A stretch of DNA of 64,000 nucleotides, from positions 1 to 64,000 of IMG/VR virus record IMGVR_UViG_3300035703_000008; one strand, written 5' to 3'. The position numbers were made by a program, and so were the translations under genes. Positions within the stretch are counted from its first letter, which is position 1; each line of letters begins with the position of its first letter. Positions 5,183 through 64,000 of this stretch are shown here, one piece after another. A model generated the notes under the pieces. It did no database searches. It saw only the letters and a list, made by a program, of their open reading frames with translations, and was not told the DNA's origin.

Positions 5183-5557
5183 ATGAGAGCCCAAGAATTC
5201 GTCACCGAAAAGTGGAGCACCAAGTATAAACGCTCTATCAATTGCTCTGACCCTCGGGGATTCAGCCAGCGTGCCCATTGTCAGGGTCGTAAGAAAAACA
5301 ATGAAGATCAAGACCTGGCGGAAGATCTACGCAAGTGGTTCCGAGAAAAGTGGGTTCGTTTTGGCCCTGATGGAAAGATTCGCGGGGATTGTGCTCGCGG
5401 ATCCGACGCTGAGGGCAAGCCCAAGTGCCTGCCACAATCAAAGGCACATGCCCTGGGCAAGAAAGGTCGTGCGAGTGCGGCAGCCCGTAAGCGCAGACAA
5501 GATCCCAATGCCGACCGCCGTGGCGCTGCACGGAATGTTCCCACGAAAAAATCATGA
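5183..5557 (+). CDS. basic two-module protein with MRAQEFVTE leader
   Basis: ATG at 5183; modules separated by LAE. Confidence 0.7.
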   Translation: MRAQEFVTEKWSTKYKRSINCSDPRGFSQRAHCQGRKKNNEDQDLAEDLRKWFREKWVRFGPDGKIRGDCARGSDAEGKPKCLPQSKAHALGKKGRASAAARKRRQDPNADRRGAARNVPTKKS

Positions 5558-59077: not shown

Positions 59078-59662
59078 ATGGAACTCATAAAAGTAAATCA
59101 AGACTTGATCGCCAAGTTTCCTTATCCTGGAGATGTGTATGATCTCTATGATTCTATCCGATCCAAGCTGGATGTGTTGTTTTCTCGTGGAAATCATTGG
59201 ATACGCATGGATGACGGGGTTTCTACCTACAAAGATCAAGAATTCCCCGAGCAAGGCACTGGACTGCATCACTGGCCTGAGTTGCGACCTTTCCTAGACT
59301 GTGTCTGGCCCAGTGTGAAAGAGTATGCCAGACTGGTGGACCTTGATCCTGAAAGATGTGAGATCCGTACCATGTGGGCCAACATATATCATCCCGGCGG
59401 TCGTGTCAATCGCCATCGGCATTTTTACACCGACAAACTGCCCACTTTCTCGTTGATATGCTATCTAGTAAGACCGCCTGAGTCAGGGAATCTGTTTGTC
59501 TCAGTGCCCGGGGAGGACGATGTCGTGGTCAAAGAGATCGACTATGCCGAGGGCGACATCGTGATTTTCCCCAGTCGCAGGCTGCACTGGAGCGGGCCAA
59601 ATCTCAGCGACCAAGATCGTGTGTTGATCGCATTTGACTGGTATCAGACACCGAGCGGTTGA
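59078..59662 (+). CDS. 2OG-Fe(II) oxygenase
   Basis: WAN...HRH, GD.VIFPS..LH....N....R..IAF. Confidence 0.8.
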   Translation: MELIKVNQDLIAKFPYPGDVYDLYDSIRSKLDVLFSRGNHWIRMDDGVSTYKDQEFPEQGTGLHHWPELRPFLDCVWPSVKEYARLVDLDPERCEIRTMWANIYHPGGRVNRHRHFYTDKLPTFSLICYLVRPPESGNLFVSVPGEDDVVVKEIDYAEGDIVIFPSRRLHWSGPNLSDQDRVLIAFDWYQTPSG

Positions 59663-59718
59663 CCATTAAATAGCACGATGCTATACTAGTGGAACAGTAA
59701 GCAACACGCTCTTTAACA
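59659..59718 (+). promoter_or_regulatory. sigma70 promoter followed by rrn-type boxA
   Basis: TTGACC-17-TATACT (59659-59687); GCTCTTTAACA at 59708-59718. Confidence 0.8.
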
Positions 59719-59749: not shown

Positions 59750-60106
59750 CACCATATTGAAGCACATTACTCTCAGAGCACAGAGCATCCGCGGAGAGGA
59801 CCGATCACGTTCGGCTGCACGGTCGCCGACTCAGTAGTGTGTTTCAATATGGTGACACCATATCCAAACGCATTGAGATTCGGAGTGATCAACCGCGGCA
59901 ATGCAGACAACAGGAGATGAGCGGCCTGCCAGTGCGTTTGGATATGGTATCAAAAGGTCACAGCAGATGCAGGTATCGTGCGTGGACGCATGCACTATTC
60001 GGGCCCTCCCAGCCGGGGACGGGTCCTGAGACAACTGCGGGCTCGGCTACGGACCCTTTAGCGAGGGATTCCCAAATCGCCCCGATCTCTGCTGTGACCT
60101 TTTGGT
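59750..60106 (+). ncRNA. tandem array of three long-stem RNA elements
   Basis: 19-22 bp stems in which every mismatch is G-U; units 1 and 2 are homologous and covary. Confidence 0.7.
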
Positions 60107-60129
60107 ATCATACTAGCCTCAAGATTTTT

Positions 60130-60326: not shown

Positions 60327-60401
60327 GCACCGTTCGTCTATCGGTTAGGACACATCCCTTTCACGGATGGAAGAGGAGTTCGATTCTCCTACGGTGTACC
60401 A
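60327..60401 (+). tRNA. tRNA-Glu (TTC)
   Basis: Cloverleaf, CCA. Confidence 0.92.
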
Positions 60402-60443
60402 TTTTAGGTTAGTTTGCTAAATAAAGTAAAGGAAAACTAACCA

Positions 60444-60887
60444 ATGGCATTAGGAACTTGTAAAACCTGTAGTAAAGAGTTTAGATTCTTCGGAAGTCAA
60501 TCATCGGGTCAATTCTGTTCGAGAGAATGCACCCACGATTACAGAACTAAACTGATTATGGAAAGCGGTAAAGGTAATAAGACCAATGCTGCAACATATT
60601 TGCGAAGATTTGTAAAATACGAATGTTCTTATTGTGGAATCAGTAATTGGCAAGGAAAGCCAATCTCACTGCAAATCGATCACATAGACGGAAACAATAA
60701 AAATAATACAATCGAAAACATAAGATGGTTATGCCCAAATTGTCATAGTCAAACTCCAACTTGGGGATTTAAAAATGCTAGTGAATCCTCGAAACAGGCA
60801 AGCCAACAAGGAGCAAAAAAAGGCAACCAAAAAAATCATCTAAACAATAAATCTTGTCTATCGATAGCAGATTTAGAAAGGTTGTAA
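60444..60887 (+). CDS. HNH homing endonuclease
   Basis: CSYC, LQIDHIDGN..NN..EN.RWLCPNCH; AT-rich. Confidence 0.9.
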   Translation: MALGTCKTCSKEFRFFGSQSSGQFCSRECTHDYRTKLIMESGKGNKTNAATYLRRFVKYECSYCGISNWQGKPISLQIDHIDGNNKNNTIENIRWLCPNCHSQTPTWGFKNASESSKQASQQGAKKGNQKNHLNNKSCLSIADLERL

Positions 60888-60914
60888 GGGGTTCGATTCC
60901 CCTACGGTGTACCA
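60856..60914 (+). pseudogene. remnant second copy of tRNA-Glu (T arm, acceptor 3' strand, CCA)
   Basis: AGGGGTTCGATTCCCCTACGGTGTACCA versus AGGAGTTCGATTCTCCTACGGTGTACCA; GTCTATCG D-arm fragment. Confidence 0.8.
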
Positions 60915-60938
60915 TATATACAGAGCAAGGAGAAAGCC

Positions 60939-61125: not shown

Positions 61126-61200
61126 CGCGGGATGGAGAAGAGGCAACTCGCCAGCCTCATAAGCTGGAGATCGCAGGTTCGATTCCTGCTCCCGCTACCA
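61126..61200 (+). tRNA. tRNA-Met (CAT), initiator-like
   Basis: C1:U72 mismatch, CGCGGG start, CCA. Confidence 0.85.
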
Positions 61201-62461: not shown

Positions 62462-63202
62462 ATGGCCACTTATACTCGTCAAACCGTTACCCATGTGCAT
62501 CACTGGAGTGATCGCACCTTTACCTTTCGTTGCACACGTGATCGGTCATTCCGATTCGCTGCCGGTGAATTCGTCATGATCGGACTCGAAGTCGAGGGTC
62601 GGGCCGTGCTGCGTGCCTATTCAGTGACCTCGGCGCCCTGGGAAGAAGAACTGGAGTTCCTGTCGATCAAGATCGCCGACGGCGAACTCACCAGCCGACT
62701 ACAACACATACAAGTGGGCGATACCGTGTTGATCGGCGAACGTGCCACCGGTACGTTAAGGAACGAAGCTCTTGCGCCCGGGCGCGATCTCTGGATGCTG
62801 GCCACTGGCACAGGACTGGCACCATTCATGAGCCTGATGCGTGACCTTGACACCATCGAGCGTTGGCAGCATCTACATGTGGTACACAGCGTGAGACATG
62901 GCCAGGACTTGGCCTATCACAACCAGCTGGCGGAGGCCTTTGCCGGCGAAGACCTGCATGACTTGGTGGCCGCCAAACTGGTCTATCATCCAGTGGTCAC
63001 TGGCGAGGGTGCAGCTCGCATCGGCGATCAGCTCAAGTCAGGTCAGTTGGAGTTGGATCCTGATCAGGATCGTGTGATGCTGTGCGGCAATCTCGAGTTC
63101 AATCATGAACTGGCCGAATGGTGCCGCGGTGCAGGCATGACCGAGGGTTTGATGCGTAGGCCTGGTGGCTTCGTGCTGGAACGAGCCTTTGTGGAAAAAT
63201 AA
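62462..63202 (+). CDS. fpr: ferredoxin/flavodoxin-NADP+ reductase
   Basis: RAYS, GELTSRL, ATGTGLAPF, MLCG, ERAFVEK. Confidence 0.92.
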   Translation: MATYTRQTVTHVHHWSDRTFTFRCTRDRSFRFAAGEFVMIGLEVEGRAVLRAYSVTSAPWEEELEFLSIKIADGELTSRLQHIQVGDTVLIGERATGTLRNEALAPGRDLWMLATGTGLAPFMSLMRDLDTIERWQHLHVVHSVRHGQDLAYHNQLAEAFAGEDLHDLVAAKLVYHPVVTGEGAARIGDQLKSGQLELDPDQDRVMLCGNLEFNHELAEWCRGAGMTEGLMRRPGGFVLERAFVEK

Positions 63203-63213
63203 TAGATCTAGAT

Positions 63214-63287
63214 GCGGGTATGGTTTAATGGTAAAACGAAACCTTGCCAAGGTTTAGTTGCGAGTTCGATTCTCGCTACCCGCTCCA
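63214..63287 (+). tRNA. tRNA-Gly (GCC)
   Basis: Cloverleaf, CCA. Confidence 0.92.
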
Positions 63288-63293
63288 CGCTGG

Positions 63294-63322
63294 TTGACAT
63301 CTAAAACCCGATATTGTATACT
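63294..63322 (+). promoter_or_regulatory. sigma70 promoter
   Basis: TTGACA-17-TATACT. Confidence 0.85.
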
Positions 63323-63332
63323 AACAACAACT

Positions 63333-63423
63333 GGAGACGTGACCGAGAGGCCGAAGGTGCTCCCCTGCTAAGGGAGTATGCGCCAAAAGCGCATCGTGGG
63401 TTCGAATCCCACCGTCTCCGCCA
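63333..63423 (+). tRNA. tRNA-Ser (GCT)
   Basis: Cloverleaf, long variable arm, CCA. Confidence 0.93.
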
Positions 63424-63427
63424 AGAC

Positions 63428-63625
63428 GTGCTGTCTAATCAACAGCTAGTGTGGTCCGCATGTCGAGAAGTGGTGTGATAGCCACAGGACCTTACCATTT
63501 GGAGCAAATGGCGCTGGCAATGCGACAATCCTCCCTGGTCGGGAAGCGGGTGGAAGGCATGCGTGATGGGATTGAGACCGCTCGGTTCTTGATGTGCTAC
63601 AATTACCGCCGCAGGGGGGAAGCAC
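63428..63625 (+). ncRNA. unassigned multi-stem RNA A
   Basis: Closing GTGCT/AGCAC with several internal helices. Confidence 0.55.
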
Positions 63626-63626
63626 C

Positions 63627-63837
63627 TGTTGTCATCAGTGAAGGCGTGAGCGAAAGTATGGCCATGCCCCAACTACCAGGGGAGAGCACCACCCCGAGCT
63701 TCTGCGACTCTGTTATAGAGCGGACCTGATCCTGGCCGGTCAGGATGAGCATGCGGCGGGGGACATTGGCGTTGGATTCATAGTCCAGATAACGTTCGGG
63801 TCTTAAACACAGGGTAGTGCCTTCACCGATGACGATA
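63627..63837 (+). ncRNA. unassigned multi-stem RNA B
   Basis: Long closing stem GTCATCAGTGAAGGC/GCCTTCACCGATGAC. Confidence 0.55.
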
Positions 63838-64000
63838 TCGCCACAGATATCTCGGCATAAAACGATGTCTTTGCTGTGTCTGGGTTAAATATTTTCCTAT
63901 ACGGAGTCAAATCATGGATATATCCATATTACTATTATTGGCAGCAGTGGCAGTGCTTGTATTTTTGTTGAGCAAAAAACAGAACCGTCCGCAAAATCTC

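What the first reader, a model, noticed from the sequence alone, without database searches (positions are those of the whole stretch)
63627..63837. Second ~210-nt RNA closed by a ~19-bp stem
Seen: TGTTGTCATCAGTGAAGGC pairs with GCCTTCACCGATGACGATA. Inside are ACTACC/GGTAGT, CCCGAGC/GTTCGGG, a CTCTGTTATAGAG hairpin and ATCCTG/CAGGAT. It follows the same long-stem-plus-cargo plan as the 59750 array. Inference: another processed ncRNA; a 6S-like or reduced RNase P-like role is conceivable but unsupported.
Basis: partly seen in the sequence, partly recalled or inferred. Interest (0 to 1): 0.6.

Follow-up and report, generated by a model that had tools for sequence, protein, structure and literature searches.

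The report
Conserved structured RNA in phage tRNA array
The ~210-base stem-closed element is real: it is one copy of a previously uncatalogued, evolutionarily conserved structured RNA gene that a clade of giant freshwater and subsurface phages carries inside their tRNA gene arrays; what the RNA does is still unknown.

Summary
The 19-position closing stem (63627-63645 with 63819-63837) exists as described: 16 Watson-Crick pairs, 2 G-U, 1 A-C. BLAST-level searches found no homologue. One 21-nt seed led to related copies in other jumbo-phage contigs. Covariance models built only from those relatives collected 23 loci (17 distinct sequences). A profile built from them hits the 209-kb genome once, exactly at 63630-63830 on the + strand (E 9e-15).

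Covariation is strong. All 13 family-wide pairs of the closing helix show compensatory double changes, 86% of cells are paired against 67% in shuffles, and the covariation score is 0.49 against 0.18.

In relatives the RNA lies on the tRNA strand. It often fills the gap between two tRNAs to within 1-14 nt, and an initiator-type tRNA-Met often follows it.

It has no match in Rfam 15 (RNase P, 6S, SRP, tmRNA, Y RNA, GOLLD/ROOL). It is not coding, is not repeated, and is unrelated to T4 rnaC/rnaD, although it sits in the same kind of place.

Best reading: a stable non-coding RNA, co-transcribed with tRNAs and released by tRNA-processing nucleases. Its target is unknown and there are no expression data.

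The parts
63294..63322 (+). sigma-70-like promoter candidate (TTGACA, 17 nt, TATACT) upstream of tRNA-Ser; probable start of the transcript that carries the element
   Evidence: 11 of 12 consensus matches; consensus match only, not shown to be active
63333..63423 (+). tRNA-Ser(GCT), upstream neighbour in the same transcription unit
63424..63626 (+). separate conserved structured RNA ('A family'); it starts directly after the tRNA 3' end and abuts the finding
   Evidence: 86+ related contigs, covarying helices, no Rfam match
63627..63837 (+). the finding: G000 copy of the conserved tRNA-array RNA family ('C family'), 211 nt from end to end of the closing helix
   Evidence: relatives-only profile hits 63630-63830, E 9.3e-15, and is the only hit in the 209-kb genome
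63627..63645 (+). closing helix P1, 5' strand. The inner 13 nt (63633-63645) correspond to the family-wide helix; the outer 6 are a G000-specific extension
   Evidence: all 13 family pairs covary
63819..63837 (+). closing helix P1, 3' strand (A-C mismatch 63637/63827)
63646..63656 (+). conserved joining segment GUGAGCGAAAG, identical in the G001/L142/G003 subgroup
63672..63677 (+). helix P2, 5' strand (ACUACC), preceded by conserved CCCAA
   Evidence: ACUACC/GGUAGU, ACCAUC/GAUGGU and ACUGCU/AGCAGU in different members
63813..63818 (+). helix P2, 3' strand (GGUAGU), stacked directly on P1
63679..63695 (+). hairpin GGGG...CCCC after P2; the stem sequence changes in relatives (GGA/UCC, AGG/CCU)
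   Evidence: read from alignments; weaker support (helices 4-5)
63708..63720 (+). small hairpin CUCU...AGAG
   Evidence: relatives have a covarying 3-bp hairpin at this place
63723..63746 (+). hairpin containing AUCCUG/CAGGAU
   Evidence: family helix with 7 of 8 pairs covarying
63760..63764 (+). 5' strand of the inner helix that pairs with 63800-63804
   Evidence: 88% paired, 4 of 6 pairs covary
63772..63788 (+). variable hairpin enclosed by the inner helix (UUGGA...UCCAG)
   Evidence: 5 pairs, all with compensatory changes among 4 sequences
63800..63808 (+). 3' strand of the inner helix running into the invariant UUAAAC (63803-63808), the most conserved letters of the family
63603..63884 (-). 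93-codon stop-free frame on the opposite strand; judged not to be a gene
   Evidence: no ATG/GTG/TTG before 63752, no Pfam/PHROG/tblastn hit; intermediate codon score; frame not kept in any relative

Best explanation
Window 63627-63837 (+ strand) is a gene for a structured non-coding RNA of a conserved family. Members are 145-221 nt from end to end of the closing helix, and jumbo phages of this clade carry them inside their tRNA gene arrays.

Shown here:
- The fold is kept by compensatory evolution. It has a long closing helix P1, a stacked 6-bp helix P2, several internal hairpins, and an inner helix ending in an invariant UUAAAC.
- There is one copy per genome.
- The copy is always on the tRNA strand, and in many genomes it fills the gap between two tRNAs.

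Inferred:
- It is transcribed with the tRNAs, in this genome probably from the promoter-like site at 63294-63322 together with tRNA-Ser and the neighbouring 'A' RNA.
- It is released by the nucleases that mature the flanking tRNAs: RNase P at the 5' end of the next tRNA, and 3'-end processing of the previous one.
- It is then kept stable by the closing helix, which hides both ends.
- It most likely acts in trans as a protein- or RNA-binding small RNA in translation or tRNA metabolism during infection. Its neighbours are tRNAs, often an initiator-type tRNA-Met, and a phage tmRNA.

The molecular target is unknown.
For: Homologues and membership.
- Copies in relatives were found from a 21-nt seed.
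- MAFFT alignments made without any structure already show P1, P2 and the inner helix kept by double changes (22 of 46 pairs).
- Covariance models R1 and R2, built from relatives only, find 23 loci and 17 distinct sequences.
- On alignment A8, 86.4% of cells are paired against 66.7% in shuffles. 38 of 47 pairs have double changes. The covariation score is 0.487 against 0.182 +/- 0.012 in shuffles and 0.04-0.13 when partners are slid. For P1, 13 of 13 pairs covary; for P2, 5 of 6 (similar figures).
- A relatives-only profile HMM hits this genome once, at 63630-63830 (+), E 9.3e-15, over its full length. The G000 copy forms 12 of 13 P1 pairs and 6 of 6 P2 pairs.

Context.
- In 22 of 23 loci every predicted tRNA is on the element's strand (none opposite); the 23rd locus, L091, has no predicted tRNA.
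- A tRNA ends within 17 nt upstream in 13 of 23 loci, and one starts within 14 nt downstream in 13 of 23.
- 5 of 12 near-complete relatives have exactly one copy.
- Promoter-like site upstream.

The element is not coding.
Against: - There is no expression evidence.
- In this genome no tRNA follows the element. A small ORF starts 77 nt later and no terminator is predicted, so its 3' end is undefined and it could remain part of an mRNA leader.
- The single-sequence fold is only marginally better than shuffles (z = -1.67).
- 7 of 12 near-complete relatives lack the RNA, so it is dispensable for the clade.
- Alignments A7 and A8 were fitted to the model's structure, which inflates pair counts somewhat.
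- The proposed function rests only on gene neighbourhood.
Confidence: 0.8

Rival explanations
1. A cis-acting processing or insulator element. The long helix would bring the flanking tRNA ends together, or act as an RNase III/RNase E site that separates stable RNAs from the downstream mRNA, and the excised piece would have no function of its own.
For: The RNA lies at tRNA junctions. A 13-19 bp helix approaches RNase III substrate length. The 59750 array shows the same stem-plus-cargo design with very stable stems. In G000 the element separates the RNA genes from ORFs.
Against: Unpaired letters (UUAAAC, CCCAA, GGGA) and several internal hairpins are conserved, which a spacer does not need. There is only one copy per genome, although arrays have dozens of tRNA junctions. 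No RNase III gene was found in the 60%-complete genome, so any RNase III cleavage would depend on the host enzyme.
Confidence: 0.12
2. A member of a known RNA class in disguise: a reduced RNase P RNA, 6S RNA, Y RNA, SRP RNA or a tmRNA piece.
For: The ends are paired as in RNase P, 6S and Y RNAs. The size is close to minimal RNase P RNAs. The setting is translation-related.
Against: No Rfam 15 family reaches its gathering score on the window, E = 10 on this stretch, or E = 1 on relatives' copies. The consensus is multi-branched, not rod-like. No Ro60/TROVE gene is present in G000 or in 10 near-complete relatives. The real tmRNA lies elsewhere.
Confidence: 0.03
3. A small mobile element (MITE-like) whose terminal inverted repeats give the stem.
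For: There are 19-nt inverted termini. The element is absent from many relatives and sits at different places within tRNA regions.
Against: There is a single copy in the genome and no target-site duplication. The arms differ completely between relatives while pairing is kept, including strand-specific G-U pairs. Orientation always follows the tRNAs.
Confidence: 0.02
4. A small protein gene, or a decayed one, on the minus strand (93-codon open frame 63603-63884).
For: The stop-free frame is longer than expected, and its codon-usage score is the best of the six frames.
Against: There is no canonical start before 63752 and no ribosome-binding site. There are no Pfam, PHROG or tblastn hits. The codon score lies between the coding and non-coding distributions. 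No relative keeps an open frame through the element on either strand. The frame would also overlap the conserved A RNA.
Confidence: 0.02
5. A chance inverted repeat in an intergenic spacer.
For: About 0.33 such stems are expected per genome-strand, and the fold z-score is weak.
Against: There is homology and covariation across 17 distinct sequences.
Confidence: 0.01

Closest known systems
Phage T4 small stable RNAs rnaC and rnaD (species 1 and 2), encoded directly after tRNA-Arg in the T4 tRNA cluster
   Same: Same kind of place and probably the same biogenesis: non-tRNA stable RNAs of 119-139 nt placed head to tail after a tRNA in a phage tRNA cluster. Here the order is tRNA-Ser, A RNA, then this RNA. 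The phage is a distant T4-type relative by its DNA polymerase. The function of the T4 RNAs is annotated only as 'small, stable RNA'.
   Different: No detectable relationship: model R2 with filters off gives no hit on rnaC or rnaD. T4 rnaC contains a tRNA-like T arm, which this RNA lacks. This RNA is larger and has a long closing helix.
GOLLD and ROOL large ornate RNAs (Rfam), often next to tRNA genes in phages and prophages (from my own knowledge)
   Same: Structured RNAs of unknown function, carried by phages beside tRNA genes.
   Different: About 200 nt rather than roughly 600-800 nt; no Rfam match.
Y RNAs / bacterial YrlA
   Same: The 5' and 3' ends form a long stem that closes a variable structured module.
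   Different: No YrlA or Y_RNA model match on the element. No T-arm-like module. No Ro60 (TROVE) gene in G000 or in ten near-complete relatives.
6S RNA and RNase P RNA
   Same: Paired termini; the size is near that of minimal RNase P RNAs.
   Different: No model match even at E = 10. The consensus is a multi-branched fold without a central bubble, and I could see no P4-type conserved strands.
tRNA-linked small RNAs released by tRNA processing, such as the tRNA-linked RNAs of murine gammaherpesvirus 68 or 3' external transcribed spacer RNAs of bacterial tRNA operons (from my own knowledge)
   Same: Maturation of a non-tRNA RNA by the nucleases that cut the adjoining tRNA.
   Different: Different organisms, sizes and folds. 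The resemblance is in biogenesis only, and that biogenesis is inferred here, not shown.

Membership tests
tRNA-array RNA family defined here (models R1/R2, 'C family') | Sequence profile match over the full length | tested here: met
   A profile HMM built from 17 relatives only hits 63630-63830 (+), 51 bits, E 9.3e-15. It is the only hit in the 209-kb genome.
tRNA-array RNA family defined here (models R1/R2, 'C family') | Closing helix P1 stacked on 6-bp helix P2, both kept by compensatory changes | tested here: met
   G000 forms 12 of 13 P1 pairs and 6 of 6 P2 pairs. In the family, 13 of 13 P1 pairs and 5 of 6 P2 pairs covary.
tRNA-array RNA family defined here (models R1/R2, 'C family') | Invariant UUAAAC between the inner helix and P2, and CCCAA before P2 | tested here: met
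   UUAAAC at 63803-63808 and CCCAA at 63668-63672.
tRNA-array RNA family defined here (models R1/R2, 'C family') | Located in a tRNA array, on the tRNA strand | tested here: met
   G000: after tRNA-Gly, tRNA-Ser and the A RNA, on the + strand. Relatives.
RNase P RNA | Match to any Rfam RNase P model (types A, B, archaeal, T) | tested here: not met
   No hit at gathering score or at E up to 10. None on relatives' copies at E up to 1.
RNase P RNA | Pre-tRNA 5' cleavage activity | not testable with these tools
   Needs an in vitro assay.
6S RNA | Rfam 6S model match and a rod-like fold with a central bubble | tested here: not met
   No model hit. The consensus has 8-9 helices and several branch points.
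tmRNA / SRP RNA | Rfam model match | tested here: not met
   The only hit is a 12.5-bit, E 3.3 tmRNA_permuted match that starts in the tRNA-Ser T arm and covers the neighbouring A RNA. The true tmRNA is at G000 68634-68987.
Y RNA / YrlA | Model match, and a Ro60 (TROVE) partner gene | tested here: not met
   No Y_RNA or YrlA hit on the element. No TROVE gene in G000 or in 10 near-complete relatives. A host Ro protein cannot be excluded.
T4 rnaC / rnaD | Stable RNA gene directly following a tRNA in a phage tRNA cluster | tested here: met
   T4 annotation; G000 layout. This is an analogy of position only.
T4 rnaC / rnaD | Sequence or structure similarity | tested here: not met
   R2 with filters off gives no hit on rnaC or rnaD.
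MITE-like mobile element | Several copies with conserved terminal repeats and target-site duplication | tested here: not met
   Single copy. The arms are not conserved in sequence. No duplication at the ends.

The most novel reading that the evidence does not exclude
This RNA, the equally uncatalogued A RNA next to it (63424-63626) and the stem-closed RNAs of the 59750 array would together form a phage-encoded RNA toolkit that acts directly on translation. For example, this RNA could be a partner or regulator of the phage's own initiator tRNA, which follows it within about 10 nt in many relatives. Alternatively it could be a new catalytic or scaffold RNA that handles the phage's 30-60-gene tRNA arrays.
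Probability: 0.1. Interest if true: 0.85.

Novelty: new variant of a known kind. Interest (0 to 1): 0.6.

Why it matters
Phage tRNA clusters have been known since T4 to hold extra 'stable RNAs' whose role has never been explained. This element shows that a whole clade of environmental jumbo phages (genomes of roughly 200-520 kb, apparently infecting Betaproteobacteria by their tmRNA type) keeps at least one, and probably three or more, distinct structured RNA genes inside its tRNA arrays. Their folds are preserved by compensatory evolution and none is in Rfam.

A defined family now exists, with a covariance model, exact boundaries set by flanking tRNAs, and a recurrent link to an initiator-type tRNA. 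That makes the old question of what non-tRNA RNAs in phage tRNA clusters are for testable in new systems. It also adds annotation for stretches that are otherwise read as empty intergenic DNA.

Tried and rejected
- blastn of the region against GenBank phages: no match.
- blastn of G000 63199-64599 against five long relatives: only the upstream A RNA, tRNAs and one 21-nt seed matched.
- Local blastn against about 200 related loci: only the 21-nt seed.
- Two-arm DNA pattern in IMG/VR: no match.
- Synteny through the FNR-like gene found nothing. Synteny through the 129-aa downstream gene found 16 loci, none with the element.

Coding reading rejected. Repeat or MITE reading rejected.

Known families rejected:
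- Rfam at gathering score and at E up to 10: nothing.
- No RNase III gene in the genome.
- No Ro60 gene.
- No relationship to T4 rnaC/rnaD.
- blastn of relatives' copies against GenBank phages: no match.

Expression. The look-up of sequencing runs listed only DNA metagenomes. The best holder is a subsurface metagenome with 0.95 of the sampled words, probably the source sample.

Literature. A 2023 survey of IMG/VR structured RNAs (PMC10690425) predicted 8,495 motifs of 29-151 nt. Its alignments are not held as text, so I could not check whether part of this family is among them.

A model search of 50 further, mostly short, related records found no more copies.

Full report
SETTING. The window is the first 64 kb of a 208,932-bp IMG/VR virus record that is about 60% complete. 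The record is a jumbo phage. Its family-B DNA polymerase is 50% identical to that of Sinorhizobium phage Phosso and 46% to Atu_ph07, and it is related to T4-type polymerases. Nearly 600 IMG/VR contigs encode a polymerase 81-89% identical.

From 59.7 kb onward the window holds a tRNA array, all on the + strand. The finding lies in a 490-nt gap with no credible ORF. The gap runs from tRNA-Ser(GCT) at 63333-63423 to a small membrane ORF that starts at 63914. A strong sigma-70-like site (TTGACA, 17 nt, TATACT) lies at 63294-63322.

THE OBSERVATION. Positions 63627-63645 pair with 63819-63837: 16 Watson-Crick pairs, 2 G-U and 1 A-C. A scan of the 209-kb genome finds only six stems of this quality on the + strand. 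Three are in the 59750 array and one is in the tmRNA. Block shuffles give 0.33 per genome-strand. The single-sequence fold is only 1.7 sd better than shuffles. On its own, then, the stem is suggestive and no more.

A RESTRICTION THAT SHAPED THE WORK. The look-up of sequencing runs listed DNA metagenomes only: a subsurface metagenome with 0.95 of the sampled words, probably the source, and a second study with 0.52.

From that point no letters of window 63000-64000 (G000 63000-64999) were sent to any search tool.
- Covariance models were built from relatives' loci only and were run on relatives' loci and records only.
- The one later DNA pattern was written from relatives' sequences.
- The G000 copy was compared only with alignment and folding tools and with local scripts.
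- Read-level evidence is therefore missing.

FINDING THE FAMILY. BLAST-level searches had suggested an orphan sequence. The exception was a 21-nt exact match in two relatives. Reading those places showed a stem-closed element of about 200 nt with three shared blocks:
- GUGAGCGAAAG after the 5' arm;
- AACUACCAGGG;
- UUAAACACAGGGUAGUGCC before the 3' arm.
The arms themselves have a different sequence but still pair. A third copy came from a motif scan of loci already held.

A MAFFT alignment made without any structure, followed by RNAalifold, gave the closing helix, the ACUACC/GGUAGU helix and an inner helix, with 22 of 46 pairs kept through changes on both sides.

Model R1 (three relatives) and then R2 (eight relatives) found further members. 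A pattern scan of IMG/VR written from one subgroup added eleven loci. In all there are 23 loci and 17 distinct sequences, 145-221 nt between the ends of the closing helix. Five of 12 near-complete relatives have exactly one copy.

A sequence-only profile built from the 17 relatives hits the whole G000 genome once, at 63630-63830 on the + strand, over its full length, with E 9.3e-15.

COVARIATION. Figures are from the 17 distinct sequences (one search is similar on 12 sequences).
- 86.4% of cells are paired, against 66.7% in shuffles.
- 38 of 47 pairs show changes on both sides.
- The covariation score is 0.487, against 0.182 +/- 0.012 in shuffles and 0.04-0.13 when partners are slid by 1-3 columns.
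- All 13 pairs of the closing helix and 5 of 6 pairs of P2 show compensatory changes. P2 is 99% paired.
These alignments were fitted to the model, which favours the structure. The structure-blind alignment shows the same helices.

ARCHITECTURE IN THIS GENOME.
- P1: 63627-63645 with 63819-63837. The inner 13 pairs are family-wide.
- Conserved joiner: 63646-63656, followed by a small hairpin.
- CCCAA, then P2: 63672-63677 with 63813-63818, stacked on P1.
- Hairpin: 63679-63695.
- Hairpins: 63708-63720 and 63723-63746.
- Conserved CAUG: near 63750.
- Inner helix: 63760-63764 with 63800-63804, enclosing a variable hairpin at 63772-63788.
- Invariant UUAAAC: 63803-63808.

GENOMIC CONTEXT IN RELATIVES.
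- In 22 of 23 loci every predicted tRNA lies on the element's strand (none opposite); L091 has no predicted tRNA.
- In 13 of 23 loci a tRNA ends within 17 nt upstream.
- In 13 of 23 loci a tRNA starts within 14 nt downstream.
- In ten loci the element fills an inter-tRNA gap with spacers of 1-14 nt on both sides.
- In 13 of 23 loci the next tRNA downstream is tRNA-Met(CAT). The nine of these read mostly begin CGCGG and end CCGCAACCA, with a C1-A72 mismatch like bacterial initiator tRNA. That comparison is from my own knowledge of the E. coli initiator.
- In G000 the element directly follows another conserved RNA (A, 63424-63626). A directly follows tRNA-Ser. No tRNA or terminator follows the element.

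WHAT IT IS NOT.
- No Rfam 15 family matches at gathering score, at E up to 10 on this stretch, or at E up to 1 on relatives' copies. This covers RNase P, 6S, SRP, tmRNA, Y RNA/YrlA, GOLLD and ROOL.
- The genuine tmRNA is a permuted, Betaproteobacteria-type gene at G000 68634-68987.
- No Ro60 gene is present in G000 or in ten near-complete relatives.
- No RNase III gene is present in G000.
- T4 has the same layout, with tRNA-Arg followed by rnaD and rnaC, but R2 finds nothing there and rnaC has a tRNA-like T arm.
- The 93-codon open frame on the minus strand has no start and no homologue, and it is not kept in relatives.
- The element is single-copy and has no target duplication.

MECHANISM.
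- Shown: a conserved, covarying fold; single copy; a position inside tRNA arrays on their strand with minimal spacers.
- Inferred from established knowledge of bacterial tRNA maturation: the element is co-transcribed with the tRNAs. RNase P cutting at the next tRNA's 5' end sets its 3' end, and 3' processing of the preceding tRNA sets its 5' end. P1 then protects both ends, giving a stable RNA.
- Inferred from neighbourhood only: a trans-acting role in translation or tRNA metabolism.
- The main rival is a purely cis-acting processing element. The conserved unpaired letters and the single copy per genome argue against it.

NOVELTY. The kind of feature (non-tRNA stable RNAs in phage tRNA clusters) has been known since T4. 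This family has no match in Rfam 15 or in GenBank phages by blastn. A 2023 IMG/VR survey of 29-151-nt motifs (PMC10690425) may contain part of it, but that could not be checked.

LIMITS. There are no expression data and no isolate. The host is inferred only from the tmRNA type. The covariation test used here is not phylogeny-aware.

Noticed in passing
window 63424-63626 (+): A second uncatalogued structured RNA ('A family', about 200 nt). It starts directly after the CCA end of tRNA-Ser and abuts the finding. It is found in at least 86 related IMG/VR contigs, always right after a tRNA and often followed at once by another tRNA. It has highly conserved blocks (GAUGAGAAGU, GCUGGCAAUGCGA, AGCGGGUGGA, UAUAAUUACCGCC) and covarying hairpins (20 of 35 predicted pairs with double changes). 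The only Rfam signal is a weak, non-significant tmRNA_permuted match that starts in the tRNA T arm.
   Followed up: partly
window 59750-60112 (+), the '59750 array': Three abutting hairpins with 22-25-bp stems and 54-120-nt cargos. Fold z-score is -7.2 and there is no Rfam hit. The cargo of the third (about 59966-60048) is conserved in 12 or more relatives, where it lies just after the A RNA and is closed by a stem of different sequence. A promoter-like site (TTGACC, 17 nt, TATACT with TG) lies at 59659-59687.
   Followed up: partly
window 59750-59771 / 59833-59854; loci L121, L150, L098, L172: The arm sequences of the first array hairpin (CCAUAUUGAAGCACA / UGUGUUUCAAUAUGG) recur several times, in both orientations, in the tRNA regions of relatives (six or more times in L121). 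In L121 they form the closing helix of that phage's copy of the finding's family. The reason for this reuse is unexplained.
   Followed up: no
loci L101, L162, L099, L175, L124, L252, L085, L234 (downstream of the element): The tRNA(CAT) that follows the element in many relatives looks like an initiator tRNA: 5' CGCGG, 3' CCGCAACCA, C1-A72 mismatch. G000's similar tRNA is at 61126-61200, not next to the element.
   Followed up: partly
G000 68634-69014 (beyond the window; L002 5635-6015): A phage-encoded permuted (two-piece) tmRNA of Betaproteobacteria type (155 bits), with tag peptide ANDEVFALAA. Relatives carry similar genes. This suggests a betaproteobacterial host.
   Followed up: partly
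window 60374-60402 and 60887-60915, flanking the HNH ORF 60444-60887: The 3' end of tRNA-Glu is repeated (93% identical over 29 nt) just after an HNH endonuclease ORF that sits inside the tRNA array. This looks like the footprint of a homing-endonuclease insertion.
   Followed up: no
G000 64105-64494 (L002 1106-1495) and loci L212-L227: A 129-aa protein of unknown function, encoded just downstream of the finding, has relatives (45-55% identity) that are also embedded in the tRNA arrays of other phages.
   Followed up: no
loci L212-L214, about 5365-5516: ARAGORN predicts a tRNA with anticodon CTA (an amber suppressor, labelled tRNA-Pyl) next to a tmRNA in more distant phages. This may hint at stop-codon recoding.
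   Followed up: no
G000 140456-140740 (+) and 156976-157087 (-), beyond the window: These are the only other long stems of comparable quality outside the tRNA/tmRNA region in the genome-wide scan. They were not examined.
   Followed up: no
locus L085 1425-1500 (G003): A tRNA-like gene missed by ARAGORN (weak tRNA-Sec model hit, anticodon region reads TCC) directly precedes that phage's A RNA.
   Followed up: no
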